The notes beneath the pieces are model-generated. The model was not told the origin of the DNA. It searched no databases and saw only the letters and a list, made by a program, of their open reading frames with translations. Shown here one piece after another: positions 7,601 through 49,745 of a stretch of DNA of 64,000 bases. Within the stretch, counting starts at the first letter, position 1; each line of letters starts with the position of its first letter. Made by a program: the position numbers and the translations under genes. This DNA comes from Pecten maximus (taxonomy: Eukaryota): positions 22,134,001 to 22,198,000 of the forward strand of contig NC_047018.1 of the NCBI RefSeq assembly GCF_902652985.1, in the 5' to 3' direction.

Positions 7601-7638
7601 CCAGATATCAATAATTATAAACCAAGTACCCAGATATA
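1695..7638. repeat. 29-bp satellite array (about 200 units), consensus ATAAACCAAGTACCCAGATATCAATAATT
   Basis: Direct tandem periodicity of 29 bp. 35-bp variants (…CAGTTAATATACTAGTAAAC…) occur mainly in the left part. The left edge is degenerate and the right edge is sharp. Confidence 0.98.
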
Positions 7639-8351
7639 TACTTATCACTCGTTTATCATTATGTATGGACAAAGAAGCCAGATATAAAAAATGAAGAATG
7701 CGAAATGTCGTCTCAATTAATCTTTTATTCTGTTATTTATACGGTGTTTTGAAAAAATGATTAAAATAGTATTGTGTATGAATATAGTTCTGATTCAAGC
7801 AACGAATGAAGATACACCGTCCTATACTATAACTGGAGACGTTATTAACTGATCTACCTTGTAATTAGTTCTAGGTGTCCCTGTCAACTGGACCTACAGG
7901 TTTAGTTTTAGAGTAAGTACATGTTTTGTAAGTCTAGAAATTGTTTATATATGTCCATCAAAAATAATGGGTGGAACCTTGACAGAACCTTAACCAAGTT
8001 GATCGTAACGGGAATAGGAGAACTATTTATACCTGTTTACATACTTTGCTTACAAAAGAAATACATTTACAGGTACAACATTTATCATGAAATGGCAAAT
8101 AGATCATTAAGGCATTTAAAACACGACAAATACTGTGTTCTGTCTGACAAAGACAGATATCAATCTGTGAAGGACATGAACTTTTGACATCTTTTCGAGG
8201 TAAACACATTTCAATGAAGGATATTGCGAACACAGCATGCCCGTTTTTGGAATATAAAGAATTCTAAACTATTTGAAGGTGTTTTTATTGCATGAATTTT
8301 GACTTCCCGAGAATGTTTTTAGAATAATATCAACGTTACACAGCACTTGAC

Positions 8352-11920: not shown

Positions 11921-12409
11921 TCATTTGGTTAGGAGCATCTGTTTTGATGAAGGCTCATGCTTCAATATAGATTTTGGAACAGTTTTAATGTAAATTCTTG
12001 CAGCGTGTTTTTCAGCATTACATGGTTCGTAAGCTACCGGAACAATATAGCGTTCATCAACCCACTGTACGTGGTGTTCTGACCCCCTTCTTCTAGTTGA
12101 ACGACGTCCTGTTGCTCGCTTTCTTCCTTCATTAGCGTCTGCCGACCACTTTGGGCCTTCTTCACACTCCGACCCGTCTGGTGAGTCTGGAATTGTAGTT
12201 AGACTGTTTTTTTCGAGTTGTTTTCGAGATATACCGTCCAAAAACTTCATGACCTCAGGATCTAGGTTTGTTAGACTTTCCTCGTCGGAGAAATTTAGCT
12301 GTTTCAGCACCATCTGAAATGCGTCCGATCCCCTCCTCATAGGGACTTTATGATTCGGAGAGGGACTCCTTGACATTCCGCCCATACTGTGGTCACTGTC
12401 ACTGTCCAT
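11921..12409 (-). CDS. Single-exon 162-aa uncharacterised, probably disordered protein with RRGS/RRST kinase sites and candidate PP1-docking motifs
   Basis: Uninterrupted ORF that is GC-richer than its flanks, AAAATGG start context, hydrophilic Ser/acidic/basic composition. Motifs RRGSD, RRST, RRRGSE, HHVQW and KSILK. Confidence 0.8.
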   Translation of the reverse strand: MDSDSDHSMGGMSRSPSPNHKVPMRRGSDAFQMVLKQLNFSDEESLTNLDPEVMKFLDGISRKQLEKNSLTTIPDSPDGSECEEGPKWSADANEGRKRATGRRSTRRRGSEHHVQWVDERYIVPVAYEPCNAEKHAARIYIKTVPKSILKHEPSSKQMLLTK

Positions 12410-18756: not shown

Positions 18757-18764
18757 TCACAATT
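18757..18764 (-). CDS. Putative last coding exon of the receptor (E-L-stop, then 3' UTR)
   Basis: Strong acceptor CTTGTTTTTTTTAG. Phase 1 gives GAA TTG TGA. An unseen intervening exon could change the frame and lengthen the tail. Confidence 0.4.
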
Positions 18765-21700
18765 CTAAAAAAAACAAGCGATGAACTTTTATAATCTTAC
18801 TATTAATTTCCCTCGCTTATAATGTATTTAGTAATACTATTAACTTCACATCTGATACTTTAAACAAAATGAAATAAACCATTAATAAGAAACTAATAAT
18901 GAAAAAAATTAAATTAAAAAAGGCGAATATGCAACAATTCCTGCGCCACTACAATAACAATGACGTACTTTCTATTCTGTATAATGTGAAATAAGTGCGT
19001 TTTCAGTTGGATTCGTACAATCAGATTTTAATGAATCAAGAAAAAAATATCGCCATTGGTAAACCAGTCGTGTTATCGTAGTACACCTGCGCATACTTTT
19101 TCAACAGCCCATACGTCCCAACTTTATAGAGGAAGGCATCATCAATATTTGTACATGGGTAAAAGGAGCAGAACTCTTTTGAAGTAAAGTGTTTATTAAT
19201 ATGTTTTCTTTCAAAACTTTGAGGTGCTTAATATTGACTCTGAGATGGAAATGAAATGAGTTATTAGGATGACATTTTAAATTTGGACAGTAAAACTGTA
19301 ATTCTTTATTCCCAAACGAAGCAACTGTTACACGTGTATACAAGTATTCTACCATTTTACATAACCGTTTTCTATGATTCACCCATACACACGTATCTTA
19401 TTATTTTATATAGATACGAGTTTTCTATTACTTTACATATAAAAGAATTCCATTATTTTACATATATAAATATTCTATTGTACAAAAACTATACCTGTAC
19501 TTACCGTCTTCCATATCTTTATAAGTAATATTTATATTAGAACTCTTTCGGCTTGTCTTTCTTCTGAATTTTCTGCAACAGACAAGCCACACAAGTAAAG
19601 ATATATTTGGATTATCATTTAAAAAGTAGATAAATGATACATAGGAATACTCACTTAAAATTTTTAAAAGTCAACAAGACAGCGAAAACAAGTAAACAGG
19701 TCATAAAACCATTTCGCCGAAAAGTTGTATCAAGGGTCAAAATTGGAAGACATCAATTAATGACATTAACACCCATGTTGCATAATAAATGTATACAATA
19801 CATTTCTGACGTATCATTGAACAGAAAATGTGAATATCAATAAAAATAATTGTATATGGTTTGATCCTTACCTTACAAGAAAATATGTTGCTGTTGCTAC
19901 TGCTGTACCGAGAATTATGATTACACAGGCAGCAATGATGCCTTTATCAAGTACACTTAATTCTTCGCCAGAATCTGCTTCCGGTAACATCTTTAATGGA
20001 GCTAAAATAACAGACAAAAGAGTGACAGGTATACATGTATTATTCATTTGTTATTTTATACTTTTATCAAATACTCTTCGTTAACCTCAATAATCATATT
20101 GACATATATATAGGGTAATGATTAGTTGTAAATTGTGTGTGTGTGCGTGCGCGCGTGAAATTATAGTTTGTGATACTAATGTATGCTAAAATTATCTGAA
20201 ATAAAAAAAAAATACTTCACTTTTTCCTTTTATTTTATCACAAGCTGGTAATGACGAATTCCATCTTTTATCTTTCGTGCACATCAGACCAACGTATTTT
20301 TTGTCATTTTTACAGCCGACAGATATCACCCCTCCTACAGACAAGGAAGCACCGGCATCCATCTTCATCACATGCAGGTCATTTAATGTCGGAAGTGGAC
20401 ATTTCACCGCTGAAAAGTATTATTGAAATATTTCAGTGCTAAAATCACAAGCAATTACCAACCAGTAAATGAAATCGTAATTCTAACTAGGTAAAAAAAA
20501 AAGCAAAATGAACATTTACAGGAGATCCTTGAAAACGTAAAACAAGATTATTGCAAGGTGTTCCAGAGGTACGCTTCATCGTCAACGCCCACTAGGTTAT
20601 AACTAGGTGTTCCAGGGGTACGCTTCATCGACAACGCCCACTAGGTTATAACTAGGTGTTCCAGGGGTACGCTTCATCGACAACGCCCACTAGGTTATAA
20701 CTAGGTGTTCCAGGGGAACGCTTCATCGACAACGCCCATTAGGTTATAACTGGGTGTACCTGAGGTACGCTTCATCGACAACGCCCACTAGGTTATAACT
20801 AGGTGTTCCAGAGGTACGCTTCATCGACAGCGTCCGCTAGGTTATAACTAGGTGTTCCAGGGGTACGCTTCATCGACAACGCCCACTAGGTTATAACTGG
20901 GTGTACCTGAGGTACGCTTCATCGACAACGCCCACTAGGTTATAACTAGGTGTTCCACAGGTACGCTTCATCGACAACGTCCGCTAGGTTATAACTAGGT
21001 GTTCCAGGGGTACGCTTCATCGTCAACGCCCACTAGGTTATAACTAGGTGTTTCAGTGGTTCGCTTCATCGTCAACGCCCACTAGGTTATACAATGTAAC
21101 TAGGTGTTCCAGAGGTACGCTTCATCGACAACGTCCGCTAGGTTATAACTAGGTGTTCCAGGGGTACGCTTCATCGACAACCTCCACTAGGTTATAACTA
21201 GGTGTTTCAGTGGCCGAGTGGTTAAGGTGTCCCGACACTTTAACGCTAGCCTTCCACCTCTCTGGCTTGCGAGTTCGAAACCTACGTGGGGCAGTTGCCA
21301 GGCACTGACCGTAGGCCGGTGGTTTTTCTCCGGGTACTCCGGCTTTCCTCCACCTCCAAACCTGGCACGTCCTTAAATGACCCTGGCTGTTAATAGGACG
21401 TTAAACAAAAACAATGTTCCAGGGGTACGCTTCATCGACAACGCCCACTAGGTTATAACTAGGTGTTTCAGAGGTACGCTTCATCGACAACCTCCACTAG
21501 GTTATAACTAGGTGTTCCAGGGGTACGCTTCATCGTCAACGCCCACTAGGTTATAACTAGGTGTTTCAGTGGTACGCTTCATCGTCAACGCCCACTAGGT
21601 TATAACTAGGTGTTCCAGGGGTACGCTTCATCGACAACGCCCACTAGGTTATAACTAGGTGTTTCAGAGGTACGCTTCATCGACAACCTCCACTAGGTTA

Positions 21701-24700
21701 TAACTAGGTGTTCGAGGGGTCGACACGCCCACTAGGTTATAACTAGGTGGTTCCAGGGGTACCTTCATCGACACCCTCCCCCCCCCATAGGTTATAACTA
21801 GGTGTTTCAGTGGTACGCTTCATCGTCAACGCCCACTAGGTTATAACTAGGTGTTCCAGGGGTACGCTTCATCGACAACGTCCGCTAGGTTATAACTGGG
21901 TGTACCTGAGGTACGCTTCATCGACAACGCCAGCTAGGTTATAACTAGGTGTTCCAGAGGTACGCTTCATCGACAACGCCCACTAGGTTATAACTAGGTG
22001 TTCGAGAGGTACGCTTCCCACACGTCACGACCCACTAGATTTACCTAGGTGTCAAGGGGTCGCCTTCATCTACAACGCCCACTAGGTTTAACTAGGTGTA
22101 CCCCTGAGTACGCTTCAGTCGACACACGCCCACCTAAGTTTGATAACAGGGTTTCCAGAGGTACGCTTCATCGACAACGTCCGCTAAGTTATAACTAGGT
22201 GTTCCAGAAGTTCGCTTCATCGGCAACGCCCTACTAGGTTATAACTAGGTGTTCCAGGGGTACGCTTCATCGATAACGCCTACTAGGTTATAACTAGGTG
22301 TTCCAGAGTTACGCTTCATCGACATCGTCCACTAGGTTATAACTAGGTGTTCCAGAGTTACGCTTCATCGACAACGTCCGCTAGGTTATAACTGGGTGTA
22401 CCTGAGGTACGCTTCATCGACAACGCCAGCTAGGTTATAACTAGGTGTTCCAGAGATTCGCTTCATCGACAACGTCCGCTAGGTTATAACTGGGTGTATC
22501 TGATGTACGCTTCATCGACAACGCCAGCTAGGTTATAACTAGGTGTTCCAGAGGTTCGCTTCATCGACAACGTCCGCTAAGTTATAACAAGGTGTTCCAG
22601 AGGTTCGCTTCATCGATAATGCCCACTAGGTTATAACTAGTTGTTTCGTAATAACGCTTCATCGACAACGCCCACTAGGTTAGGACTAGGTGTTTCAGAG
22701 GGTTTCATCAAGAACAATACACGGAAAATACAAAACTGACAAACATACAAAGCACACTGGTGTTCTCATATTGAAAGAAAGGTTTGAATTCAATTGCGAG
22801 GAAGTACTACAAACGAGAAATTAATCTGAGACAATTTCAAACTGAATATCTTATATTTTCATGATATTGAAAATATACATCTTTCTATGTATTCTTAAGG
22901 GAAATGTGTGTATTAAACAAGTACCTGTACATATGGATTCGAGTTTCCCCCATGTGCCGTCAAGTCCACACTGAAGTGTACGAGAGCCCTGGAGTTCAAA
23001 TCCATCCTTACATTTGATACTAACAATATCCTTATACAGGTAGCTCGTCTTCTTTGGTATGATATTGTATTCAACTTCCAAAGGTGGCGCACACGATATA
23101 TCTACAAAATATCAATGTTAATCGGTACAGATTAACGTTTTCCTAAATCATATTTTCTAAGATTTCTAGCAATTTACTCAAATCACAAATATATAGGTCT
23201 GATTCAACCCTGCTGCTTTTACTAGCTTTCAAATGAACTGTGACGGAATATCTACGCATTGTAAAGACCGTATACTATTACAATGAGCGCTTTAGCGATA
23301 AGATTTGTAATCTAGCACAACATATTTAATACTTTGATGTTAAAAAAAACCAAGTTTGTCATTCCCGAAATTTATAGCTTCGTTACATACAGCAACCGAC
23401 CATTTTAAAAAGATAAATCATCATTCTTATACTTTCATTTTAACATATAACTACTACACGATGTAGATATATCATGGTACATAAAACTCTTGCAGGTGGG
23501 ACAGATTATGATATATTGTCTTGTAGTTGGGATCCTTACATTGACATGTTGGAGTGGAAGCGTTCCAGGTCCCGTCCTTAAGACATTTCATATACGAGGA
23601 ACCTACTACCCTCATCCCCGGCCGGCACCATATAGATATGACATCCCCGGGGGTGACGCCACTACCCTGCTCCACCATCACATACAGGTCGGAAGACAGA
23701 CTCGGTAGCGCGCACATCATTGCTGAAATACAGTTGGTTTTATCTTTATATATATATATATATATATATAATGAGAATAATTTGTGATATTGTAATCAAG
23801 GCATTTCATTAGTTAAAATGTTTAACTTTATTTGTACACTGAAATCAAACACATATGTTGTTTATAAGCAGCTTGGATGATGAGTTTTAAGATATGCAAT
23901 GCATTTAAAAAAATTAGTAGTAACTATGTACAAAAGTTATATAAGAATTAAGGACCTACCATTTATATTATATCGATATATAGACATCTCACTTCACCCT
24001 CAGTCAATATTTTTCTATCAGGCGATATAACACCTTAATGTCCTCACCAAAGACCCATTATTGATAAATATGTAGTTTCTTACTTACCTTGACAGTCTGG
24101 CAGATGACCTCCCCAATGGCCGTTTGCTTCACAGATCATCTCTTTATTCCCGACAGTCTTATAGCCAGACTTACATGCAACTGTCAGCGTTCCACCAAAC
24201 AATAGGTCTGAGGAGCTATTTATAATATACTGCAGCGTATCTGGAGGGGTGGGCACTTGACATGAAAGGGCTGCACAAAAGATGGAGAAAATTATTTCCA
24301 GATATGTTCTGAGTAATTAGAATTTATATGAGCAAACATTTATCTATAACCAACGTTCGATACTAACCATCACATCTGTGCATTGTTCCGTTCCATGTCT
24401 TGTCATGCTGACAAGCTAAAGCGACAGGAATTTGGGGACTATATCCTTCCGCGCATATCACCAAGATCTTGTCTCTGTAACTGTAAACAGTTTTCATACC
24501 CCGAACTATAACGCTGTGGTCAGGCAATACCGGACTTGAGCAGCTGGACACTAAAACAAACACACATTTTTTTCTTATTTGCAGAAAAAGACTATTTACA
24601 CATACGAGTAACAGTGTTGAGTTGTTGACATGAATTGTTACACATTATGTGCGTTTTAAGATTTCAACAGTATATAATAATCGTTATCCTCTTTATTGAT

Positions 24701-27700
24701 AAGGAGCCACGATATAGATACTCTTGATAACAACATGAGTATATTTTTGTTTACATTCTTGATATATATTTAAACACATGCTTAGAACCATTTTGGTTTT
24801 CTCGATTTCCCTTCTAGATGGCCCTAAGATCACCTGTACAAACTCTGACTCTAGCATGCCTGTTTCATCGAATTACTTCGTTTACCCTTCACAACCAGGT
24901 CCGATTCAACCCTTTCTAAACCTGATTAACATTCCGTGCGGCAAGTTAACCAGTAATACTATAATAAAATGAACAACATTCCCTGGAGCAAAGAAACCAG
25001 TAATACAAAAGAAGAATGAACAGCATTCCCTGGAGCAATGAAATGAGTAATACGGAAGTAGGGAGAGCAACATTCCCTAGCGCAAAGAAAATAAAACAGT
25101 AATACGGAACTAGAATGAATAACCTTCCCTGGAGCAATGAAATGAGTAATACGGAAGTAGGGAGAGCAACATTCCCTAGCGCAAAGAAAATAAAACAGTA
25201 ATACGGAACTAGAATGAATAACCTTCCCTGAAGCAAAGAAAACAATAATACGGAAGTAGAATGAACAACATTTTCAAGGGCAAAGAAAACAATGAAAATG
25301 AACAACATTTTCTAGGGCAAAGGAAGCAATACGGCAAGGAAAAGAGTAATCTGGAAGTAGAATGAACAACATTCACTACGACAAGAGCGTTACTCTTACC
25401 AACAAATAGTTAGCCAACCTTTTTCCAATGGATTTCCATTCGGGAAATGATGCTCGATATGTTATCTGACGGGCGCTTTAATACTTTTTACCAACGAATT
25501 ATCTGGTTTTTTCTTTGCTTTCCTCCCGTCTAATTGACCAGGCATTCTTCATGTTTTGATTTTTTGACTCCCACGAGCTTGACCTTCACGATTGCTGATG
25601 CCATGACCTTGACACGTTGCTCATACCATCAAAAGATAATTTCCTTATCATTTGACCTGTGTGACCTTGATTGAAGGTCAACGTTAACAATAATCACCAG
25701 TGTTACATATAGCCAGCCATAAGCCATATCATTATGCCTCTTTTCGAAAAAAAATTTGAAGTTTGGCGAAATATCATTTTTAATGTGCGATGTGTAATCT
25801 TTCGCTATCACCTTTGTATATGCGACCATTAGAACATGTTCGTTTTGATCTGATATGTTTATATTTGACCATTATTTGACCCCTCAATAAAGTCTTGAAT
25901 TTGATATATTCTCTTATCCCGACCAGGACCTACACCAGACACTAAGAAAGTGTGAAGTGAAGTTTTTCTCGTTCAAAATTCTTTTTAAATACATGTAGTT
26001 ATATTTATAGATCCCCGACATTAACCTTCTCGGTATCGTTAATGTCAAAATTAGCTCGGTATTCTTTATCAGGTACTAAAATATGAGCGTTTAATCGTGT
26101 TTACAAGATATATGGAAATAAGAATAACTATAACAATAAGAAGAAAAACATAACGAAAATTATAGGGGTTTCCATCTGAAATGAAAATCTCTGATTGAAT
26201 ATATAATAAATTACCTATACATTCACTTGTGTCGTACGACCAGGAACCGTTGACCAAACAGGTGAGCTCAGCAGGACCTTTCAGTTCCATTCCGCTGACA
26301 CAATTAAGTTGCAGCGTACCACCAACATTCATGTCCTCACTACGATTCATGATTACGTACTTTTCTGGTGGCATATCTGGTGGACTACATGTCACCGCTA
26401 TAAATGGAAAGTGATTACAAAAACTAAACGTTGGTATATCTATCGTATACGTTATAATTGTCCAATTCTTACACTGGCTCACTTCTGATGTTTTACCTCC
26501 TTCGAGCCAAACTGATAAAGCAGTTACCAGCCTGTATTCGCTTTGTGTTTTCAATTTTACCACGTTTACCTAAACATAATTAACAAATCAAATTAAAAAA
26601 TACATTATATAGAAATACTGCTAACAAGGGTTAATGGTGTCATCAATATGACGCAACGCTATACAATGGTGTCATTTCTGTTGCCTTTGACTTCAGGAAC
26701 AACGGGAAATAATTATCATAATGTAGTACGGGGATATGAATATCTTACAACTCTATGTGAAGCGTTCATATTATATGATACTAAAATACACAGTTAAAAC
26801 GAAATATATAAAAGATTATAATCAATGGATATAAAAGATTATAAGGGTTGGATAAACGTTTGAAATCAATGGAAATCATGCCTTTTACTCTGGTTAAGCG
26901 TGATTCAGTCATAGTCAATTTGTGTTTTATCACGAGGTTGAAGTAAATGAAAATAATTAGAAGATTATTATGTTAAATATTGTTAACTCTATATATGCTC
27001 TATACAAAAACGGGCATTAGTGATATAATCGGGTCAAATAAATAAAGTTAGTATACTCACGTACGCATTCTGGAACCTGACCGAACCACGACCCGTCTAG
27101 CTGACAGGTGAGGACATCATGAGATTTTGGAGTGAAACCCCTTTTACACAAAATCTTTAACGCATCCCCGTAAACGAACGATAATGTTCTATGCTCTATA
27201 TAGCTGTTGTTGGTCAAAGTCGGCAGAGGGCATTTAACACCTGGAATGAAAACACCCCACAGATATGTTTTATTAGGTAACACCTGGAATGAAATCAAGC
27301 CACATATATGTTTTATTAGGTAGCGCCTTGAATGAAAACAGGCAACAGATATGTTTTATTAGGTAGCGCCTTGAATGAAAACAAGCCACATATATGTTTT
27401 ATTAGGTAGCGTCTGGAATGAAAACAAGCCACATATATGTTTTATTAGGTAGCGCCTGGAATGAAAACAAGCCACATATATGTTTTATTAGGTAGCGTCT
27501 GGAATGAAAACAAGCCACAGATATGTTTTATTAGGTAGCGCCTGGAATGAAAACAAGCCACCAATATGTTTGATTAAGTAGCGCCTGGAATGAAAACAAG
27601 CCACTAATATGTTTTATCAGGTAGCGCCTGGAATGAAAACAATCCACTAATATGTTTTATCAGGTAGCGCCTGGAATAAAACAAGCCACAGATATGTTTT

Positions 27701-42700: not shown

Positions 42701-45700
42701 ATTTGCTCAGGAACGATCAAACCTTATAATGGCAATACATCTAGGTACAGCAATACAAGCAACGTTTTACTCTGTTATGACAGTCAGTAGACAAGATGTT
42801 GGGCGGAAATGATAACAGATTTGGGTGTAATTTCTCATCGTTATCCGACTCAATTTGAAATAAATTTATATCAATGTATTATTTCAAAGAATTTTACAAA
42901 AGACACACAAGATACAAGCACCTTTTTAAAAGTGGATTGCAACTAAAGCATGAAATTAGCTATACATGTAGGTGTTTGCTAGGTTCCTAACAAGAATTAA
43001 GGAACAAATATGAAAAGGTTACATACGTTTCATTTTAGAGCGAGGTCTGGTGTAGTAATTTAAATACTTGATATAAATTGCATTTAATTCGAAAGAAGAA
43101 TTTAATCATATTTACCATTCATAAAGCAAGTGGGTAAAGTGCCATTCCAGGAACCATCTTCTTGGCATTCCAGAATACCATATCCTCGGATGTTAAATCC
43201 AGGTAAACAGCGAATATCCACGGTGTCATTGTGGTGATAGACAGAGTCATGGTCAGCAAAAATGTAGCTGTTCCTCTCCAAAGCGGGCCTCGGACAGAAG
43301 GGGGTTAAATCTATTCTTGCACAAGCAGGTGTCAAATTATATCAGGGAAAACACTCAAAGATTGTATTTCATAGTCCGCACAAGGCAAGAAATGATTAAT
43401 TTTATGAAGAAATTATTATGAAATTGGAGAACAGTGACAAATGGATGAATCACTTTGAAGATGTCGGCTAACTCCGTTTTCTCTCTTAAGCGAATGTTAT
43501 TTTGTGTGGCATTTGTAAATCAACTTTGTCTCTGTTTAGGAATTACCTTGGGTAGAATAGAATATAGGTAATTTTTGTTCTATATTGTCAGTTTTGATAT
43601 AGTGATCAAGTGCCGATTTAGGCCAAAACGTTTTTGTTAATTCATTGTTGTGCATAGGGACAAAAGTAAGAGAACAAAACAAAACTCAAAACAAAGAATA
43701 ACCACGAAAAAAACATAAAAAGTGTCATTTCAATTTTGTATTTCGTGTAGACATAATGATTCTAGTTATAATGTTACCGATAGACTCGAGGAAAAAGTCA
43801 AGCAAAGTACGTAAAGAAATCGCTAGATTTAGAATATATAGTTAAATGCATGTTGGGCAAAGAAACATGAACAATGTGATCAATTACTTCAATCAAGCCA
43901 TACGTTATAAATAATATCAAGGTTAACCTCCAACTCATTAATACCATGTTACTAAATATAGTAAGAAATTTTGTCAGATATGGCGTGGAATTACCTGTAC
44001 AGCCTTCAGATGAAGCCCACGTCTTGTTAGATTGACACCATATCGTCGCCTCCCTTTGAAGAGTTCCACACGAATTTACCACGCGCAGAGATGTTCCAGA
44101 AAAGAAAGGCTTTGAAAACGGAACGCCTACTGGTAGTACTTTGTGTACAGGGAATGGAGGTACAGGGCATAGTTTTTTTGAATCTGAAAACAAAATGTTT
44201 AAATATAATATGACATGACACCTAACTAGGGCCAGCTTCTGCAACGCGTCAAATATGCGCATTTAAAGCATTATGGACAAGTGTCTTCAATATAGCCATC
44301 CACTGCGGGGCTGATATTTACTTTCGCTATCATTAAACAGCATCTACCATAGTAGTACTAGCAACACTACCATCGATATTAGGAAGTGTTTAGTTATGTG
44401 ACAAGTATTTTTTTTCATCAAAAGATTATTTATTTTAATTGCTTGTTGATAACTAAACATTATCAAAATCCAAATTATCGTTTTCCTTTGTAAAGAGCAA
44501 ATAAACATATCACATATCACCTATCCAAGAATATGCTGAGAAAAGGAGAAACTGACCTTTTCCCTTTTGCATTCTAATTCTAATCACACCAACCAAAGTA
44601 AATATGCTTGTGTTTACGTTTCTATCACATAGGTTGTAACTGGTAATAACTTACCGCATGTAGGAACGTCACACACCTCCCAACGAACGTTTTTGTTAGT
44701 TGTATAACACCAGGGTGTTGGGTGGTTGTCAGAGCTACGGCAATAGTTTTTGGCTCCTTGAGTAAGGTTTCCGAATCTGTGTTTGTGTGGCGTGTTACTG
44801 GACCATTGTTGACAAACGCGCCCACTAACCGTCACTGACGCCGTGCCACGGTATTTTGCTGGATCATCAGCCCAAAAACAACCCATGGCTGTAAATAAAT
44901 ATATATAATACATACATGTATGCGGAGAACCAATTCCAAAGTAAGATATAACACTAAATCAAACAACCAAACAATAACTGTATAGATTAAAACGTGCTAT
45001 GTAGAGTTTGTATGAATCCCATTGCGTTCATACCATCGTAAACACAATACAACACTCTTCAATCCCTATATAAGCTTTAAGGGTCCCGTTTATCATTTAT
45101 TATATATAAGCTTTAAGGGTTCCGTTTATTACCTATTATACATATGGGGAAAATGACAAATCTCTGTTTAATAGATAGTATCTCTGTTTAAATCGTATGT
45201 CTGTTTATATCATATCACTGTTTATATAGTATGTCTGTTTATATAGTATCTCTGTTTATATTGTATCTCTGTTTATATCATATCTCTGTTTAAATCGTAT
45301 CTCTGTTTATATCATATCTCTGTTTATATAGTATGTCTGTTTATATCGTATCTCTGTTTATATCGTATGTCTAATTATATCGTATGTCTGTTTATATCAT
45401 ATCTCTGTATATATAGTATGTCTGTTTATATCGTATCTCTGTTTATATTGTATCTCCGTTTATATAGTATCTCTGTTTATATCGTATATCTATTTATATA
45501 GTATCTCTGTTTATATCGTATATCTATTTATATGGTATGTCTGCTTATATGATATCGGTGGCTTAAATTGTCGATAGGTCTTTGCAAGCTTTATTCCCGC
45601 ACTTAAATAATCAATTTGATAATAAATATGTTAAACAAAGCGATATTTACTGATAATAACATACTTACGGTTGTCACACTGTCGTCCCCACCAATTCCTC

Positions 45701-48700
45701 TCGCATTTAGGACATCCACCATCAGGGTCATCACATGTCTTTGACGCACAGTTTGTAGAACATGTGCCTCCATCTGTGGAAATAATATGCCAATGTTAAT
45801 ATAGCATTTAAATATAAAACTAAGACCCGTTAACTACTATTACATGTACATAGTTATCATTGTGTAATGGGACAGTACCAAAAACGGACTACCAAACACG
45901 CATTTTGTCCACTCATTAAAGATCCAGAAGATGAATTAGACCCATGTATGACTGTTTAAAAAGAAGAATATCGAATGTTGTTTCAAAACCCAAAAGTGTC
46001 ACCCGCAGCTCACATGTACTCATCTCATAACGTTCTGATATCACCAATTAGTTATCTATGACCAGACGACTTTATTTTATCATTATAATTGTTGTTTTTT
46101 TTCTTTTTTCGAGCAAACCAGAGCATTTTTTCCCAAAACATGGATTTTATGACGTTGGACCAATCACTAACATATTAAACAATTTGTATATCTGTTGGTT
46201 TTCGAACAACTATAGCTCTGTGGACATAAACAGTATATGACATGCTATCTTATCTCATTTTGCAGTATTTCTGACTAGGTATAGCGTTTTATAGATAATT
46301 CGATATCGGCAAATTATCAAGGCCGATTCCGCCTCGATTTCAATTCGTCCAACTTCACGATGGATTGACAATTATTTTGAAAATGAAGGACAAAAGCACG
46401 AAAATTTAATCCAAGTAGGATTTTTATGTTCAGTATGGTACTTGTCATTGTGTGTACACACAACTGATCTGGTAGCTTGAAGTTAAGACCTGCATTCTTC
46501 GCACATCCTGGTCCGCCATCTTGAAAAGACCATCGATAGTGAAAACGTTACTCCCACTCAACACACACTACCTTTCCCATGAAATACCTCTCCAACATTT
46601 GGCTTGTGACTTTCTTAATCATTTTTATCGTTAAAACATTATTGAAGAGTGTTATTGGCCAATTTTCCTTCGGTGTGATAAACAATTTCGGCTTAGTGGT
46701 ATGATAATGCTATAAATATATAATTATTCCTGTTTGGCTTCGGTGATAATATATTCACTCAGGACGAATATTTAGTGTGAAAGACACAAAGTAAATACAT
46801 TTCATCATATCGCTCTACTACCCATACCTAAATCATATTCTTAATGCTTCGCATCCTTTGATAATTAATCATGGTGTTATTTTATTCTGTTACGCTGTTT
46901 GCCCACATATTTTGTGCTCCCATCAGTCATGTTTTTATTCACCATGAACTTTAACTACCCTTTAAAGTTAAAAACATATTGTTGTGTATGATCAACTTAA
47001 AACGAATGAGTTAAGCATGAACTAATTTATACAGACTGTAGAGAAAACAAATAAGCTGGTTAAAATAGTCTTTAGTAAACATGAGCTTAATTAAGATACA
47101 GACTCGAGAACAAACATGATTAAAAATAAAATAAAAAATGTAAGCTGATGAGATAGTCTGTGGAATTATCATACGAGTTAATTAGCAATGACTCAGGAGT
47201 AAGCATAAAGGTTATTTTGATCAGTTTTGCGAGTAAATTTATAAACATGCAACCCTGCTAAAGAGATCTTCTCTGTAGCTTGATCGGTTGAGTGTAAGAC
47301 TAGTCAGCCAAAGGTCCCGGTTTCGATCTAGAGAGGAAGCATTGAAGTGATTATTATGTTCTCTGTTACAGAGGAGTGGGGTGCTGCAGTTGAAAGTGTC
47401 TCCTGTCCATACGCAGTAAAAATGTTAGGGGAAAACATCACCATTGATCCCTGCGTCACTGCTGTACTGAATGGTATAACTGATCTAGTTACAGAGAATT
47501 TTAAAGATGCTGTTCTCGGGTATGCAGTCTGCCGTCGTGGGGTTAAAGTAAAACAAATTTTAACTACAGTTACAGTACCTGTGTAAACACCTCAGCAAAA
47601 CCTATTGTTCTTAATCAAAGGTCAATATTGAGTACAGGCAAACAGATGAAGGTACATAGTAAATAATCTAGCTTTAGATCTTCCTACGAGGAAAGAAGTT
47701 ATCTTCGCGTGAGGAACTTGGTGTATAAATAAAACCAATATCACATTGTCCGAAATATTGCTCTGGCTTATAAAAAAGTGATCTTGTCAAACATAAGATC
47801 AACCCTCTTAATGAACGCATTGGGCATGCTAGAATCGGTGATCACCAGACTCGTCTAAATGTCTTTTGGGTTCTTTAAAGCAGTTATGTTTATCGAACAG
47901 GCATGACTTACTCGTGTCTGCCTAAGTTGTGCATCGAAATAAGACACTGGCATGTGAGAACGGGGGTTTCTATGTTAATTGCAAGCTTAGGAGACTGTAT
48001 CCTGTTCAATATATCATATACTTAATAATGACCCTGTCGAATATAGCGATCAAATGGCATTTACATTACTCAGCTACCATTGAGGATATGTACAGAATTC
48101 ACTCCTTATTTTCCATATGATTCTTACATAGGACAGTGATATATTAGTATTTCTCCGGAGAAAGCAACCGAAACATATCCATTACTCTCATTCAGTAAGT
48201 CTTGGTCTCTTATCATCCCATTTATATGAATAATTAGAACAAATGTAACCAGGATGAGAACGAAACTACTGGCATTGGATGCACAACATTAAATAGCAGT
48301 AAAAAGTACACATTATAAATGGTTCATGCATTATTCTTATACATGATCATATATTACAAACAAAAGGTCACAATTCTATAATGCACAAACTGGATTGAGC
48401 GATGAGCTTCCGCGTGGCCTTTCATTAAACATGTAAAACAGGTCAACATAGATACGAGGTAATCTTGGTAAATCATTATTTCAATGAGCAAAAATTAAAG
48501 TTCTATGAATAGAATGAGGATTTTTGCAATTATCTATTCGATTTTATTTTTTTATTTTATTTATTTATTTATTTATATATATATATTCATTCTTTATCTT
48601 GCTTTTGACATTTTCTTTTTAACATTAGACAATGCCGCTTTGTTAAGCGATATTTCATATGCGGTAATAGGTCTGATTTATAAACAATAACATATATCTC

Positions 48701-49745
48701 AGAAATGCCTGTCAAACCAGTATTTGAGTAGACTATTCTTTTTAAAAATCGCATCTTTTTTTCTTTTCTTTTTTTCTTCTTCTTCTTTCTTTCCTATTTT
48801 TTCATGGTTTTCTCGTATTGAAAGTGTTCACTCCATGACCCTTTTGAAATGAATGATACGCACGTAGCCTAACATGTTATTATTAGAATATCCGTACTTA
48901 GTAAGCCCGTGTGTTTGACAGTTGTATGGTAGCGGTAGGAAGAATGAGGCGGATTTCCTGTTCATAGTGTAAGCGAATGTCCCTAACCTGCCTACCACCC
49001 CCGTCCCTACTTAAACCGAAAGTACCACAGTAGTCCGTTATTGTCTTATCTAGTTTTATTTTAAGTTTGAGTGACATAGATAAACAATTATGTTATTATG
49101 TTACAGTGTCGTTAATTTCCGTCATTCAACAATACACATGTACGCAGACTGTATTTTGGACGCAGTAGGCCCACTTTCATTTTTTTTTTTTGTAAAATTT
49201 AGCAGTGGTGAACAGCTACTGTTCAGTTAGCTGAAGATATATGTTATATACACTTTTACGCAGATTTGAAAAATAGAAGCTGTTCCATAGCATTGCAGAT
49301 CAATTACGTATTCTAACTGAATAACCATTGATTGGTTTCTGTATTGACTGGCCGCATACGATGCGACTAGCGTTCTCTTTCAATAGGCCAAAACCACATT
49401 AATATAAATGTTATATATCACTTAAATAAATTATTGCTGGTTAAATATGTATGTTGATACACCTTCCAAAATGTGTATTTGTATTATTTGAATATGTGTG
49501 AAAGAAATAACGGGCGGGAGGGATGAGCGAACGGACGAACAGAGAGGCGGATAAATAGACAGAAATGGCTGTTAGTTGACAGACCATCATAGAGACAGAA
49601 ACGCAAACAGAAAAAGTCCGGATAAATCGGAAGAGTCTGTGTGGGGCAAAACTCAGATGCAGTAAAAATGTAAACAATACTTACACGAGCCCTTCATTAA
49701 ATACAAGAAATAACTGAATACGAATGTGTTCCATTTGTAATGCAT
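18757..49745 (-). CDS. Multi-exon gene: type I membrane protein, about 1,700 aa, with 4 EGF-like, 4 kringle and 19 CCP/sushi domains
   Basis: 31 exons with GT-AG boundaries join in one frame: SP-[EGF-K-CCP2]-[EGF-K-CCP2]-[EGF-K-CCP4]-[EGF-K-CCP11]-TM-tail. The first and last exons are less certain than the domain exons. Confidence 0.88.
19505..19563 (-). CDS. Receptor exon: cytoplasmic juxtamembrane [20 protein letters not shown]
   Basis: TTCAG acceptor, GTAAGT donor, phase 2 to 1, basic stop-transfer residues. Confidence 0.8.
19872..20001 (-). CDS. Receptor exon: transmembrane helix [23 protein letters not shown]
   Basis: TTATTTTAG acceptor, AG|GTAAGG donor, 23-residue hydrophobic stretch followed by Arg. 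Confidence 0.88.
20221..20409 (-). CDS. Receptor exon: CCP19
   Basis: C-P-L-P…C…C…W…P-A-C pattern, phase 1-1. The donor GTGAAG is weak. Confidence 0.85.
20556..22702. repeat. 49-bp intronic minisatellite (about 39 units), CTAGGTGTTCCAGGGGTACGCTTCATCGACAACGCCCACTAGGTTATAA
   Basis: Direct 49-bp periodicity, interrupted by a SINE at 21210-21414. Confidence 0.97.
21210..21414 (+). mobile_element. tRNA-derived SINE with V-SINE-type core
   Basis: Pol III A box TGGCCGAGTGG (21211-21221), B box GTTCGAAAC (21273-21281), core GGTTTTTCTCCGGGTACTCCGGCTTTCCTCC (21321-21351), tail GCTGTTAATAGGACGTTAAACAAAAACAA. Confidence 0.88.
22925..23101 (-). CDS. Receptor exon: CCP18
   Basis: ISCAPP…IKCKDGFEL…QCGLDGTW…C, 177 nt, phase 1-1. 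Confidence 0.9.
23540..23722 (-). CDS. Receptor exon: CCP17
   Basis: MCALP…WCRPG…[15 protein letters not shown], 183 nt, phase 1-1. Confidence 0.9.
24088..24270 (-). CDS. Receptor exon: CCP16 (not in the ORF track)
   Basis: Hand translation LSCQVPTPP…[34 protein letters not shown] acceptor, GTAAGT donor. Confidence 0.9.
24368..24550 (-). CDS. Receptor exon: CCP15
   Basis: SCSSPVLP…ICAEGY…[15 protein letters not shown], 183 nt. Confidence 0.9.
24950..25385. repeat. Degenerate tandem repeat of about 50 bp with a 99-bp dimeric duplication
   Basis: TGGAGCAATGAAATGAGTAATACGGAAGTAGGG recurs 99 bp apart (25031 and 25130), and AGTAATACGGAA…AGAATGAA…TTCCCT sub-units recur. Confidence 0.85.
26215..26397 (-). 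CDS. Receptor exon: CCP14
   Basis: TCSPPDMP…NCVSGMEL…TCLVNGSWS…C, 183 nt. Confidence 0.9.
27061..27240 (-). CDS. Receptor exon: CCP13
   Basis: KCPLPTL…LCKRGF…[15 protein letters not shown], 180 nt, GTGAGT donor. Confidence 0.9.
27235..27745 (-). repeat. 43-bp minisatellite (11-12 units) derived from the 3' splice site of the CCP13 exon
   Basis: The minus-strand unit reads CCTAATAAAACATATATGTGGCTTGTTTTCATTCCAG|GCGCTA. The last unit is the real acceptor at 27241. Confidence 0.92.
28485..31432 (-). mobile_element. 5'-truncated non-LTR retrotransposon (CR1/L2 group) with 13-bp TSD
   Basis: TATTAATACCCTC at 28472-28484 and 31433-31445. 3' tail AATAAAATGTG(TTGAAA)n. 3' UTR of about 830 bp. No endonuclease domain or ORF1. 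Confidence 0.93.
29312..31432 (-). CDS. LINE ORF2 fragment: reverse transcriptase plus C-terminal Cys/His motif
   Basis: Motifs [39 protein letters not shown], and CxC…E…HFMFECP. No internal stops. Confidence 0.95.
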   Translation of the reverse strand, partial: AKSVMNCNNISNSLPPLCDNNTVIHHPFDKAECLNNYFCSISTSTPNLEPPDPPDNNFPFRIENITITEQDIKDQLLTLNDKKPPGPDNIIPKIIKQLTPSLIHPLTLLCNKTLESGIIPYSWKTANINAIYKGKGSNSDVSNYRPISITPCFSKIIEKVIFKYLFNYMKDCDIITKHQSGFLPKDSTINQLLEIYDTIVSNLDKNNEIRFIFCDISKAFDRVWHEGLLYKLETYGIKGKVLQWFKNYLSDRKQRVSTEGFYSTFKNINAGVPQGSVLGPFLFLIYINDITDCVQSKIKLFADDTSLYEIINDNHIEIAGKLTNDLDNIDTWAKNWDINFNPLKTESVLFSRKREIINPDILFANDTINCVLDHKHLGLTFSSDGKWNHHITNIHDKAYKRMNILRLLKHKVDRKSLLTIYISYIRPILEYGDVIWDNCTNQNKNYLESIQVEALRIITGLRRGTSHDKLYTETGIETLECRRKNHKLILMYKILNKETPKYLADIVEQHINDNTCTHVRYPLRNNRLFNPPFCRTENYSNSFFPSTLNELNQLDREVLNASSLNKFKTLIKSTGNNNNNNNNILEITDTFKYYGLRKYNLLLCQLRNKASNLNSDLHKDHLAESAACACNYEDENIHHFMFECPIFIDARQLLIQNLAQINHLDDHNHYNASTLLKGCSLCNTNVNINILKFVTQYIQETGRFNI
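32256..32432 (-). CDS. Receptor exon: CCP12
   Basis: SCSLPDVP…VCRG…[15 protein letters not shown], 177 nt. The conserved Trp is replaced by Phe. Confidence 0.88.
32689..32868 (-). CDS. Receptor exon: CCP11
   Basis: MCPKP…KCINQY…[15 protein letters not shown], 180 nt. Confidence 0.9.
33096..33281 (-). CDS. Receptor exon: CCP10
   Basis: RCKHQPLP…[10 protein letters not shown]…TC…W…RC, 186 nt. Confidence 0.9.
33550..33744 (-). CDS. Receptor exon: CCP9 (post-kringle type)
   Basis: QCPPPVLP…QCGEG…[15 protein letters not shown], 195 nt. Confidence 0.9.
34137..34373 (-). CDS. Receptor exon: kringle 4
   Basis: YRG…CQEW…[16 protein letters not shown]…WEICPVPLC, six Cys, 237 nt. Confidence 0.93.
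34659..34763 (-). CDS. Receptor exon: EGF-like module 4
   Basis: Hand translation [34 protein letters not shown], 105 nt, GTGAGT donor. Confidence 0.88.
34826..35495. mobile_element. Helentron-type (HINE-like) non-autonomous element
   Basis: End AACAAG…GGTCACTTGAG. The other end, GGTCACTCGAGACTTCGTCTCAGGTGA…AAAAA, has a short hairpin, a sub-terminal inverted repeat and an adjacent GACGGAC motif. Internal degenerate tandem units. Confidence 0.65.
35600..35779 (-). CDS. Receptor exon: CCP8
   Basis: VCPVP…[10 protein letters not shown]…[15 protein letters not shown], 180 nt. Confidence 0.92.
36124..36303 (-). CDS. Receptor exon: CCP7 (not in the ORF track)
   Basis: Hand translation VRCPELRP…[31 protein letters not shown], 180 nt. 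Confidence 0.9.
36594..36776 (-). CDS. Receptor exon: CCP6
   Basis: FCASPAL…ACDQGF…[15 protein letters not shown], 183 nt. Confidence 0.9.
37074..37259 (-). CDS. Receptor exon: CCP5 (post-kringle type, not in the ORF track)
   Basis: Hand translation [58 protein letters not shown], 186 nt. Confidence 0.87.
37650..37874 (-). CDS. Receptor exon: kringle 3
   Basis: [12 protein letters not shown]…CQEW…[14 protein letters not shown]…WEVCPVPRC, 225 nt. Confidence 0.93.
38134..38238 (-). CDS. Receptor exon: EGF-like module 3
   Basis: [34 protein letters not shown], 105 nt, GTAAGT donor. Confidence 0.87.
38603..38788 (-). CDS. Receptor exon: CCP4
   Basis: HCVRPTL…QCPEGF…[15 protein letters not shown], 186 nt. 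Confidence 0.9.
39535..39668. repeat. Short tandem repeat of about 28-30 bp, about 4 units (TTAATGCGCAGTAGACAACTCATCATCT)
   Basis: GTAGACAACTCATCATCTTTA occurs four times. Confidence 0.85.
40739..40915 (-). CDS. Receptor exon: CCP3 (post-kringle type)
   Basis: [11 protein letters not shown]…RCAD…[14 protein letters not shown], 177 nt. Confidence 0.88.
41070..41158 (-). pseudogene. Decayed partial duplicate of the kringle-2 exon within the downstream intron
   Basis: GGAGATTGGCTC(C/T)TCCA(A/G)TTCTGACAA…CATTGGCCGTCCT…ATTCCTCTGTAATCAGA aligns with 41417-41505, with scattered substitutions. Confidence 0.8.
41288..41524 (-). CDS. Receptor exon: kringle 2
   Basis: [13 protein letters not shown]…CQNW…[16 protein letters not shown]…WQQCNVPKC, 237 nt. 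Confidence 0.93.
42543..42650 (-). CDS. Receptor exon: EGF-like module 2
   Basis: [35 protein letters not shown], 108 nt, GTAAGT donor. Confidence 0.87.
43116..43310 (-). CDS. Receptor exon: CCP2
   Basis: FCPRPAL…RCLPGF…[15 protein letters not shown], 195 nt. Confidence 0.9.
43995..44183 (-). CDS. Receptor exon: CCP1 (post-kringle type)
   Basis: LCPVPPFP…FFSGTSL…SCG…WCQSNKTW…GC, 189 nt. Confidence 0.87.
44655..44888 (-). CDS. Receptor exon: kringle 1
   Basis: GCFW…YRG…CQQW…[16 protein letters not shown]…WEVCDVPTC, 234 nt. Confidence 0.93.
45160..45552. repeat. 17-bp minisatellite (TGTTTATATCGTATCTC), about 23 units
   Basis: CTGTTT recurs every 17 bp (e.g. 45252, 45269, 45286). Confidence 0.93.
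45669..45773 (-). CDS. Receptor exon: EGF-like module 1
   Basis: [34 protein letters not shown], 105 nt. TTTCCACAG acceptor, GTAAGT donor. Confidence 0.87.
47270..47345 (+). mobile_element. Degenerate tRNA-like (SINE-head or pseudo-tRNA) sequence
   Basis: A-box-like TAGCTTGATCGG and B-box-like GTTTCGATC at tRNA spacing. The acceptor and T stems do not pair well. Confidence 0.4.
49685..49745 (-). CDS. Receptor first coding exon: signal peptide [20 protein letters not shown]
   Basis: 61 nt ending in phase 1 at a GTAAGT donor. It joins EGF1 to give …KGSYG|GTC, a plausible cleavage site. TATAAG at about 49893-49898 upstream. Confidence 0.7.

What the first reader, a model, noticed from the sequence alone, without database searches (positions are those of the whole stretch)
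18757..49745. Large EGF-kringle-CCP cassette receptor with no protease domain
Seen: hand splicing gives a continuous frame of about 1,700 aa, SP-(EGF-K-CCP2)-(EGF-K-CCP2)-(EGF-K-CCP4)-(EGF-K-CCP11)-TM-short tail. Established: long CCP arrays typify complement regulators and receptors (CR1, factor H) and selectin stalks, while EGF+kringle typifies plasminogen activators and HGFA, which also carry a serine-protease domain absent here. I do not recognise a characterised protein with this repeated three-domain cassette on a membrane anchor. Automated pipelines would probably label it SVEP1-, CR1- or plasminogen-like. Inference: a multivalent surface receptor or scaffold, possibly in invertebrate complement-like immunity, adhesion or gamete recognition.
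Basis: partly seen in the sequence, partly recalled or inferred. Interest (0 to 1): 0.8.

Follow-up and report, generated by a model that had tools for sequence, protein, structure and literature searches.

The report
Scallop EGF-kringle-CCP membrane protein
This is a real, intact 1,704-residue king-scallop gene for a membrane-anchored protein built from four EGF-like/kringle/CCP cassettes and no enzyme domain; databases already hold it under a misleading automatic name ("SVEP1-like"), it was found only in scallops, and its function is untested.

Summary
Observation confirmed to the base. On the minus strand, 31 GT-AG exons (ATG 49745, stop 18759-18757) join into 1,704 aa with no internal stop. 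The order is SP-(EGF-like-K-CCP2)x2-(EGF-like-K-CCP4)-(EGF-like-K-CCP11)-TM-26 aa tail. The model is identical to RefSeq XP_033737673.1.

- **Organism:** the genome's size and scaffold count match the published Pecten maximus assembly.
- **Relatives:** full-length relatives appeared in only four scallop genera (60-75% identity, same domain order).
- **Domains:** neither the whole-protein Pfam scan nor the exon scans found a protease, VWA or pentraxin domain. The four kringles are solid. Fifteen of 19 CCPs pass Pfam; the other four rest on internal similarity. "EGF" is only weakly supported.
- **History:** the four-fold cassette duplication predates the split of these scallops. A shorter paralogue, (EGF-K-CCP)x3-TM, lies on another chromosome.
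- **Conserved features:** K2-K4 keep plasminogen-type lysine-binding residues. The tail keeps an invariant YKDM (YxxPhi) motif.

My best reading, by inference only, is a non-catalytic multivalent surface binding or endocytic receptor. No paper in the held library describes it. It is a lineage-restricted mosaic of familiar modules: a new variant of a known kind, of moderate interest.

The parts
49685..49745 (-). Exon 1: start codon and signal-peptide-like N-terminus ([20 protein letters not shown]), phase-1 donor GTAAGT
   Evidence: Conserved in four scallop orthologues.
45669..45773 (-). EGF-like module 1 (6 Cys, CPxC..WWGRxC)
   Evidence: No Pfam hit for this exon; assigned by similarity to the other three copies.
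44655..44888 (-). Kringle 1 (degenerate lysine-binding residues: CRSSDNH)
   Evidence: Pfam Kringle 4e-20. Residue table.
43995..44183 (-). CCP1 (type a, first after the kringle)
   Evidence: No Pfam hit. Similar to C5 and C3. The type-a profile hits Crry CCP1 at 1.5e-7.
43116..43310 (-). CCP2 (type b)
   Evidence: Pfam Sushi 1.5e-9. 45-48% identical to C4 and C6.
42543..42650 (-). EGF-like module 2
   Evidence: 77-94% identical in orthologues.
41288..41524 (-). Kringle 2 (CRNPDLE, WCY, RW kept)
   Evidence: Pfam Kringle 1e-21. Residue table.
40739..40915 (-). CCP3 (type a)
   Evidence: Pfam Sushi 2.7e-4, 21.7 bits, just above the cut-off.
38603..38788 (-). CCP4 (type b)
   Evidence: Pfam Sushi 2.7e-7.
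38134..38238 (-). EGF-like module 3
   Evidence: EGF_laminin E 0.0026, below the cut-off. AF2 model pLDDT 82; only weak EGF-type Foldseek matches.
37650..37874 (-). Kringle 3 (CRNPDNE, WCY, RRW)
   Evidence: Pfam Kringle 2e-23. Aligned to plasminogen kringles 1-5.
37074..37259 (-). CCP5 (type a)
   Evidence: No Pfam hit. 44% identical to C9, E 4e-12.
36594..36776 (-). CCP6 (type b)
   Evidence: Pfam Sushi 1e-9.
36124..36303 (-). CCP7
   Evidence: Pfam Sushi 1.8e-11.
35600..35779 (-). CCP8
   Evidence: Pfam Sushi 1.9e-12.
34659..34763 (-). EGF-like module 4, with tandem acceptors at 34763 and 34760 (isoforms of 1,704 and 1,703 aa)
   Evidence: EGF_laminin E 0.0047, below the cut-off. The one-residue difference between P0234 and P0153 falls at this junction.
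34137..34373 (-). Kringle 4 (CRNPDNE, WCY, RW)
   Evidence: Pfam Kringle 2.7e-23. 76-87% identical in orthologues.
33550..33744 (-). CCP9 (type a)
   Evidence: Pfam Sushi 2.5e-9.
33096..33281 (-). CCP10
   Evidence: Pfam Sushi 3e-6.
32689..32868 (-). CCP11
   Evidence: Pfam Sushi 9e-13.
32256..32432 (-). CCP12
   Evidence: Pfam Sushi 0.009, below the cut-off. 36% identical to C14, E 1.4e-7.
27061..27240 (-). CCP13 (the module absent from the Ylistrum orthologue)
   Evidence: Pfam Sushi 3e-12. 55-column gap in Ylistrum.
26215..26397 (-). CCP14
   Evidence: Pfam Sushi 1.8e-8.
24368..24550 (-). CCP15
   Evidence: Pfam Sushi 1.9e-8.
24088..24270 (-). CCP16
   Evidence: Pfam Sushi 8e-10. 82-90% identical in orthologues.
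23540..23722 (-). CCP17
   Evidence: Pfam Sushi 6e-9.
22925..23101 (-). CCP18
   Evidence: Pfam Sushi 1.3e-11.
20221..20409 (-). CCP19
   Evidence: No Pfam hit. 41% identical to C17, E 2e-9.
19872..20001 (-). Acidic juxtamembrane stalk and transmembrane helix ([23 protein letters not shown]), phase-2 donor
   Evidence: Hydropathy window scores 1.89.
19505..19572 (-). Cytoplasmic tail exon ([22 protein letters not shown]) with conserved YKDM
   Evidence: YKDME is invariant in four species.
18757..18764 (-). Last coding exon: final residues E-L and the TGA stop (18759-18757)
   Evidence: The C-terminus ...DMEDEL matches P0234.

Best explanation
SHOWN. A single intact protein-coding gene of the king scallop Pecten maximus (scaffold C4) encodes XP_033737673.1. 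The product is a 1,704-aa type I membrane protein. Its ectodomain is a chain of 27 small disulphide-rich modules, each on its own phase 1-1 exon. There are four cassettes of [EGF-like - kringle - type-a CCP], each followed by a run of further CCPs: 1, 1, 3 and 10. After these come one TM helix and a 26-aa basic tail. There is no catalytic domain. The cassette was duplicated as a block four times before the four sampled scallop genera diverged, and the order has been kept since. A shorter paralogue with three cassettes and a TM helix sits on scaffold C14.

INFERRED. The protein acts as a non-enzymatic, multivalent cell-surface binding receptor. Kringles K2-K4 keep the plasminogen-type lysine-binding residues (Asp55/Glu57, Trp62, Tyr64, Arg71, Trp72). 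They would serve as ligand-binding heads for exposed lysines on proteins or microbial surfaces. CCP pairs space the heads, and the membrane-proximal run of 11 CCPs holds them away from the membrane (tens of nanometres, from my general knowledge of CCP module size). The invariant YKDM (YxxPhi) in the tail would couple bound ligand to clathrin/AP-2 uptake. A TM-less isoform predicted in Mizuhopecten suggests a soluble form as well.
For: Gene model:
- 31 GT-AG exons give an open 1,704-aa frame, identical to P0234/XP_033737673.1.
- End-to-end orthologues exist in Mizuhopecten (accession-based naming, from memory), Argopecten and Ylistrum at 74, 75 and 60% identity.
- All have the same module order by local HMMs.

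Organism: the genome totals 918,306,378 bp in 3,983 scaffolds, the figures published for P. maximus (PMC7191990).

Domains.

Age of the duplication: each cassette position forms a clade across species (support 89-100). Stem branches are 0.33 (cassette 3) to 1.0, against tip branches of 0.06-0.34.

Kringle pocket residues: CRNPDxE, WCY and RW are invariant in K2-K4 of all four species. They align to the corresponding plasminogen kringle residues; plasminogen K2 also reads CRNPDRE.

Tail: YKDME is invariant and RKFR follows the TM helix.

Related ectodomain use: kringle plus CCP modules also form the ectodomain of a receptor tyrosine phosphatase in Ylistrum (P0171). This shows the module pair in a signalling receptor ectodomain in this lineage.

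Expression hint: runs on record as RNA hold 0.17-0.22 of the sampled words of 33000-38900, and the best unconfirmed ones 0.23-0.24. By my model about 0.33 of that stretch is exon.
Against: - No ligand, tissue or expression pattern is known.
- Lysine binding is read from conserved residues only. All four kringles have a shorter 34-50 loop than plasminogen (74-78 against about 79 residues).
- K1 has lost the pocket residues.
- YxxPhi motifs occur by chance in short tails, although this one is invariant across four genera.
- Overall identity of 60-75% is only moderate conservation, and no dN/dS was computed.
- Read-level splice evidence could not be obtained. The junctions rest on sequence logic and on two independent database annotations of orthologues.
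Confidence: 0.5

Rival explanations
1. It is a complement-control-like (RCA-type) membrane regulator or receptor. The CCP arrays would bind C3/TEP fragments on self or microbial surfaces, as CR1, Crry or MCP do, and the kringles would be accessory.
For: Nineteen CCPs plus a TM helix and a short tail is the CR1/CR2/MCP layout. The type-a CCP profile finds Crry CCP1, CSMD1, MCP and C4BP-alpha as its best PDB matches. The ESM Atlas feature search lists CR2, CR1 and MCP clusters, but at 0.85-0.86, which is lead level only.
Against: CCP similarity to RCA proteins is generic (24-29% to any CCP array). No RCA protein that I know of carries kringles. The most conserved parts include EGF2, K4 and CCP9, not only the CCP runs. 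C3/TEP binding was not testable here.
Confidence: 0.15
2. It is a structural adhesion or scaffold protein (cell-cell, cell-matrix or synaptic organiser, like CSMD, SEZ6, Hig or LEV-9) without an uptake function.
For: It is a long non-catalytic modular ectodomain with 34 N-glycosylation sequons and a short tail lacking any signalling domain.
Against: The family was found only in scallops, whereas core adhesion scaffolds are usually widely conserved. The conserved YxxPhi argues for trafficking. There are no expression data either way.
Confidence: 0.2
3. Its main form is soluble, made by shedding or alternative splicing. It would act as a haemolymph opsonin or matrix component, and the membrane form is only a precursor.
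For: RefSeq isoform X2 of the Mizuhopecten orthologue (P0151, 1,415 aa) ends after CCP15 with no TM helix. In the window, reading through the CCP15 donor meets a stop at once.
Against: The TM helix and tail are conserved in all four species. No TM-less isoform is on record for Pecten.
Confidence: 0.1
4. It is an annotation artefact: two or more neighbouring genes, or a decaying pseudogene array, joined by eye.
For: Read-level junction evidence is lacking. Introns carry a LINE, minisatellites and a decayed kringle fragment.
Against: There are 31 in-frame exons with no stop and uniform phase. There is only one signal peptide and one TM helix. Orthologues align end to end in four genera with the same order, including an independent author annotation (OWF46394.1).
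Confidence: 0.03

Closest known systems
SVEP1 / Polydom (the automatic database name)
   Same: It has many CCP modules and some EGF-like modules in one long extracellular protein.
   Different: Pfam finds no VWA, pentraxin or HYR domain and no calcium-binding EGF run. It has four kringles and a TM anchor, which SVEP1 lacks as far as I know. The name is a best-hit artefact.
RCA family membrane proteins (CR1, CR2, Crry, MCP)
   Same: It is a type I membrane protein with a CCP array and a short tail. Its type-a CCP is most like Crry CCP1 among solved structures.
   Different: RCA ectodomains are CCP-only. Here EGF-like and kringle modules interrupt the array four times. Sequence identity to CCP arrays is only generic.
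Selectins (C-lectin - EGF - CCPn - TM - short tail)
   Same: The design logic is the same: a binding head next to an EGF-like module, carried on a CCP stalk, with a TM helix and a short sorting tail.
   Different: There is no C-type lectin domain. The head would be a kringle, the EGF-like module precedes it, and the unit is repeated four times.
Plasminogen activators, HGFA and factor XII (EGF - kringle - serine protease)
   Same: An EGF-type module lies directly before a kringle, each on a phase-1 exon.
   Different: There is no trypsin-like domain anywhere in the protein or the window. The EGF-like module has an extra residue between Cys4 and Cys5 and fails the EGF models.
Plasminogen, apolipoprotein(a) and HGF kringles
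   Same: These are the best sequence matches of the kringles (E 1e-16 to 1e-19 per domain). The pocket residues are kept in K2-K4.
   Different: All four kringles have a shorter 34-50 loop than plasminogen. There is no PAN domain and no protease. The chain is membrane-anchored.
Same-genome paralogue on scaffold C14 (26,211,998-26,225,435) and the Ylistrum kringle-CCP receptor tyrosine phosphatase (P0171)
   Same: The C14 gene repeats EGF-like - kringle - type-a-like CCP three times and then has a TM exon. P0171 has CCP2 - kringle - CCP6 - TM.
   Different: The C14 gene has no long CCP stalk and a different tail. P0171 has no EGF-like module by my HMM and carries two phosphatase domains.

Membership tests
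SVEP1 / Polydom | VWA domain, pentraxin domain, HYR repeats and calcium-binding EGF run alongside about 30 CCPs; secreted | tested here: not met
   Pfam on the whole product (P0153) finds only Sushi and Kringle. A TM helix is present.
Kringle serine proteases (plasminogen, tPA, uPA, HGFA, FXII, prothrombin) | C-terminal trypsin-like serine protease domain (PF00089) | tested here: not met
   There is no PF00089 hit in P0153 or P0012. The chain ends in a TM helix and a tail.
Kringle serine proteases (plasminogen, tPA, uPA, HGFA, FXII, prothrombin) | Kringle fold with three disulphides and the CRNPD...PWC core | tested here: met
   Pfam Kringle E 4e-20 to 2e-23 for each of the four.
RCA (regulators of complement activation) | Ectodomain made of CCP modules only | tested here: not met
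   Four EGF-like and four kringle modules are interspersed.
RCA (regulators of complement activation) | Binding of C3b/C4b-type fragments, with cofactor or decay-accelerating activity | not testable with these tools
   This needs biochemistry with scallop C3/TEP.
Selectins | N-terminal C-type lectin domain followed by EGF and CCPs | tested here: not met
   There is no lectin domain in the Pfam scan.
   Two of the four copies hit EGF_laminin at E 0.003-0.005, below the cut-off; two hit nothing. A profile found no PDB sequence match. The AF2 model has pLDDT 82 but the best Foldseek E is 0.66; the weak list consists of EGF-type modules or EGF-bearing proteins.
Scallop EGF-kringle-CCP cassette proteins (the group defined here) | Repeated [EGF-like - kringle - type-a CCP] cassettes, a TM helix, and no catalytic domain | tested here: met
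   This gene and its three orthologues meet it. So does the C14 paralogue, in a three-cassette form. It was not found in any of the other 227 fetched kringle or CCP proteins.

The most novel reading that the evidence does not exclude
The gene founds a scallop-specific class of kringle-headed recognition receptors. In this reading, several lysine-binding kringles are displayed on CCP stalks, like a multi-headed 'kringle selectin'. They would capture microbes, damaged matrix or clot-like material by exposed lysines and deliver them for endocytosis. That would be a recognition principle not described for invertebrate immunity.
Probability: 0.12. Interest if true: 0.6.

Novelty: new variant of a known kind. 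Interest (0 to 1): 0.35.

Why it matters
- **Annotation:** the case shows how a best-hit name ("SVEP1-like") hides a distinct, conserved architecture. The four orthologues could be renamed.
- **Evolution:** it is a clean example of block duplication of a three-exon cassette by phase-1 exon shuffling. The arrangement then stayed fixed while at least four scallop genera diverged.
- **Function:** if the kringles really bind lysine-bearing ligands, this would be a protease-free, membrane-bound use of plasminogen-type kringles. It could be tested as a recognition or uptake receptor in a commercially important bivalve.
- **Limit:** bivalve genomes are full of lineage-specific mosaics of these same modules, so the architecture alone would not surprise a specialist.

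Tried and rejected
1. **Read-level splice evidence.** The look-up of sequencing runs found RNA-labelled runs. Nothing was laid. After that I sent no reference covering those places to any search tool. The tandem-repeat scan was stopped at 33900.
2. **Joined model.** The joined spliced protein was never typed or sent to a search tool. Exons were searched one by one by reference. The joined frame was checked only inside the sandbox. Whole-protein searches used database ids (P0012, P0153) that the tools themselves returned.
3. **The look-up of encoding contigs.** P0234 and P0012 are not on record there, so there is no synteny and no tool-given organism name for these two.
4. **ESM Atlas, whole protein and one cassette.** Only generic Sushi clusters came back, scoring below 0.9. 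These are leads only.
5. **EGF-like profile against PDB sequences.** Only chance matches were found.
6. **Paper searches.** Searches by accession and by kringle, sushi, scallop and bivalve terms found nothing on this protein.
7. **Considered and rejected.** It is not a SVEP1 orthologue, not a plasminogen-like protease and not a mis-joined gene pair; see the membership tests.

Full report
**1. What is in the sequence**

The feature lies on the minus strand. Stop-to-stop open segments carrying several cysteines line up in one direction from about 45.8 kb down to 19.9 kb. A scan for AG acceptors and GT donors shows that every module sits on its own exon bounded by phase-1 introns.

I added the 5' exon (ATG at 49745, donor GTAAGT after 49685) and the two short 3' exons (19572-19505 and 18764-18757), read directly from the DNA. 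Joined in the sandbox, the 31 exons give 5,115 nt and 1,704 codons with no internal stop.

The joined protein was not sent to any search tool. Exons were searched one by one by reference, and the joined search step was left out. Whole-protein searches were made only with database proteins that the tools returned.

**2. The modules**

- **Kringles.** Pfam recognises all four (E 4e-20 to 2e-23).
- **CCPs.** Fifteen CCP exons reach the Sushi gathering score. Four do not (C1, C5, C12, C19). These have the right size, phase and Cys/Trp pattern and match sister CCPs at E 1e-7 to 4e-12.
- **Type-a CCP.** The first CCP after each kringle (C1, C3, C5, C9) is a distinct subtype. A profile of the four finds Crry CCP1, CSMD1, MCP and C4BP-alpha in PDB (best E 1.5e-7). 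In the whole genome this subtype matches only these four exons.
- **Type-b CCP.** C2, C4 and C6 form a second subtype, 45-53% identical to each other.
- **EGF-like modules.** These are the weakest call. They have six Cys with the invariant pattern C-x3-C-x5/6-C-x6-C-P-x-C-x3/4-W-G-R-x-C. Two of the four copies hit EGF_laminin only below threshold, and two hit nothing. A profile found no PDB sequence match. An AF2 model has pLDDT 82, but its best Foldseek E-value is 0.66. The weak matches listed are EGF-type modules or EGF-bearing proteins: integrin I-EGF, EGF, factor Xa, Notch, laminin LE. "EGF-like" is reasonable but not proven.
- **Anchor.** A 23-residue hydrophobic helix is followed by RKFRRK and a 26-residue tail.
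- **What is absent.** Pfam on the full product shows only Sushi and Kringle. There is no protease, VWA, pentraxin or lectin domain.

**3. Independent confirmation and identity**

A HMMER search of 1.84 billion cluster representatives with the K3 exon returned a 1,700-aa protein with four kringles, the third at the position expected from my model (P0012). Its cluster holds XP_021361821.1, a 1,415-aa isoform, and OWF46394.1. All are named [quoted passage not shown].

A word search with P0012 found full-length relatives (100% coverage) in only three further clusters:
- P0153/P0234 (XP_033737674.1 and XP_033737673.1)
- P0154 (Argopecten)
- P0155 (Ylistrum balloti)

P0234 is identical to my hand model. 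P0153 differs by one residue, at the tandem acceptor 34763/34760.

The genome that holds the window has 918,306,378 bp in 3,983 scaffolds. These are exactly the figures published for Pecten maximus (PMC7191990). Assigning P0012 to Mizuhopecten yessoensis rests on my memory of the accessions.

**4. Distribution**

- In the first word search, every hit outside scallops overlaps only through kringles, at 38% coverage or less.
- A second search with the C-terminal third (CCP13 to the tail) again finds only the four scallop proteins above 60% identity. Otherwise it finds generic CCP arrays at 24-29%.
- Local HMMs for the EGF-like module, kringle and the CCP subtypes were run over all 234 fetched proteins. 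The cassette appears only in the scallop orthologues.
- Other kringle-plus-CCP mosaics exist but are built differently. One is a 1,728-aa protein with alternating CCPs and kringles and no TM helix (P0114, XP_074641425.1). Another is a Ylistrum receptor tyrosine phosphatase, CCP2-kringle-CCP6-TM-2xPTP (P0171). Two are crinoid SRCR proteins.
- Limit: proteins shorter than about 937 aa were outside the word search. The big search lists only its best 150, which favours multi-kringle proteins.

**5. History of the gene**

All four orthologues share the same module order. Ylistrum lacks only CCP13.

I built a tree of the concatenated cassettes (EGF-like + kringle + type-a CCP). It groups each cassette position across the four species with support of 89-100. 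Stem branches are 0.33 (cassette 3) to 1.0, against tips of 0.06-0.34. The four-fold block duplication is therefore much older than the split of these genera.

The same genome holds only eight copies of this EGF-like module: four here and four on scaffold C14. On C14 three EGF-like/kringle/type-a-like CCP cassettes are followed by a TM exon (26,211,998-26,225,435). A further EGF-like/kringle pair lies at 26.2895-26.2907 Mb. The cassette therefore defines a small gene family, in a genome with at least 69 kringle exons.

**6. What it probably does (inference)**

Three conserved features guide the reading.

- **Kringle pocket.** K2, K3 and K4 keep CRNPDxE, WCY and RW in all four species. These align with the plasminogen kringle residues that I know as the lysine-binding site: Asp55, Asp/Glu57, Trp62, Phe/Tyr64, Arg71 and Trp72. 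Plasminogen K2 itself reads CRNPDRE. K1 has lost them.
- **Most conserved modules.** These are EGF2, K4, CCP9 and CCP15-17 (about 77-94% identity). They are not confined to the CCP runs.
- **Tail.** It keeps an invariant YKDME. YKDM fits the YxxPhi sorting signal, by my knowledge of the motif.

I therefore favour a non-catalytic multivalent surface receptor. Its kringle heads would bind lysine-exposing ligands, and it would be taken up by clathrin-mediated endocytosis. I give this about 0.5 as a class of function; the specific lysine mechanism is less likely than that.

The rivals are an RCA-like complement regulator, a pure adhesion scaffold, and a mainly soluble form. The last is suggested by the TM-less Mizuhopecten isoform. 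None could be tested here.

Expression is hinted at only by word shares in public runs. Runs on record as RNA hold 0.17-0.22 of the sampled words of 33000-38900, and the best unconfirmed ones 0.23-0.24. About 0.33 of that stretch is exon.

**7. Comparison with what is known**

It is not SVEP1, not a plasminogen-type protease, not an RCA protein in the strict sense and not a selectin. In each case a defining feature was tested and not met (see the membership tests). Its design resembles a selectin or CR1-type stalked receptor. It borrows the EGF-before-kringle adjacency of the plasminogen activators.

No paper in the held library mentions the accessions or a scallop kringle-sushi protein.

**8. 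Verdict**

The gene is real, conserved within scallops, already modelled in RefSeq, uncharacterised and misnamed.

Its architecture is a new variant built from familiar, highly shuffled modules in a lineage rich in such mosaics. I score interest at 0.35. The most novel reading still open is a new kringle-based recognition receptor class. I give that about 0.12, and it would merit about 0.6 if true.

Noticed in passing
window 29312-31483 (minus strand): An intact 723-aa reverse-transcriptase ORF sits inside the 5-kb intron between CCP12 and CCP13, on the same strand as the gene. Pfam gives RVT_1 at 3e-30 plus zf-RVT. It is probably a young non-LTR retrotransposon.
   Followed up: partly
window 27240-27742: A 43-bp minisatellite of 11.7 copies (90% matches) ends exactly at the first base of the CCP13 exon, so the units repeat its acceptor region. 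CCP13 is the one module missing from the Ylistrum orthologue. The scan noted this separately as s1-785290.
   Followed up: partly
window 20556-22701: A 49-bp tandem array of 43 copies (76% matches) fills most of the intron between CCP18 and CCP19 and raises local GC to 45%. Smaller arrays lie at 24968-25330.
   Followed up: no
window 41074-41175 (minus strand): A decayed partial copy of the 5' third of the kringle-2 exon lies 113 bp downstream of that exon, in the intron. It is 88% identical over 90 nt and carries two stop codons.
   Followed up: yes
window 34760-34763: Tandem acceptors three bases apart at the EGF-like 4 exon explain the two RefSeq isoforms of 1,704 and 1,703 aa.
   Followed up: yes
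P0151 (Mizuhopecten isoform X2, 1,415 aa): The orthologue has a predicted isoform that ends after CCP15 with 25 unrelated residues and no TM helix. It may be a soluble form.
   Followed up: partly
G000:C14:26211998-26225435 (L013, L015, L016) and 26289405-26290732 (L014, L017): Paralogous genes lie on another chromosome. One has three EGF-like/kringle/type-a-like CCP cassettes followed by a TM exon with a different tail. The other locus shows a lone EGF-like/kringle pair.
   Followed up: partly
P0171 (Ylistrum balloti XP_060076906.1): This is a receptor-type tyrosine phosphatase whose ectodomain is CCP2-kringle-CCP6, with a TM helix near residue 604 and two phosphatase domains. It is an unusual receptor PTP ectodomain.
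   Followed up: partly
G000, whole genome: At least 69 kringle exons match K3 at E<=1e-5, many in tandem clusters (C11 at 2.29-2.35 Mb, C13 at 21.35-21.42 Mb, C8 at 8.41-8.48 Mb). This suggests a large kringle expansion in this scallop.
   Followed up: no
window 2001-8000: There is a strong strand asymmetry of composition (GC skew -0.30 to -0.43, AT skew +0.24 to +0.31, GC 27-29%), unlike the rest of the window. It is probably a repeat block.
   Followed up: no
window 11921-12409 (minus strand): A 162-aa ORF rich in Ser, Arg and Asp may be an exon of the downstream neighbouring gene.
   Followed up: no
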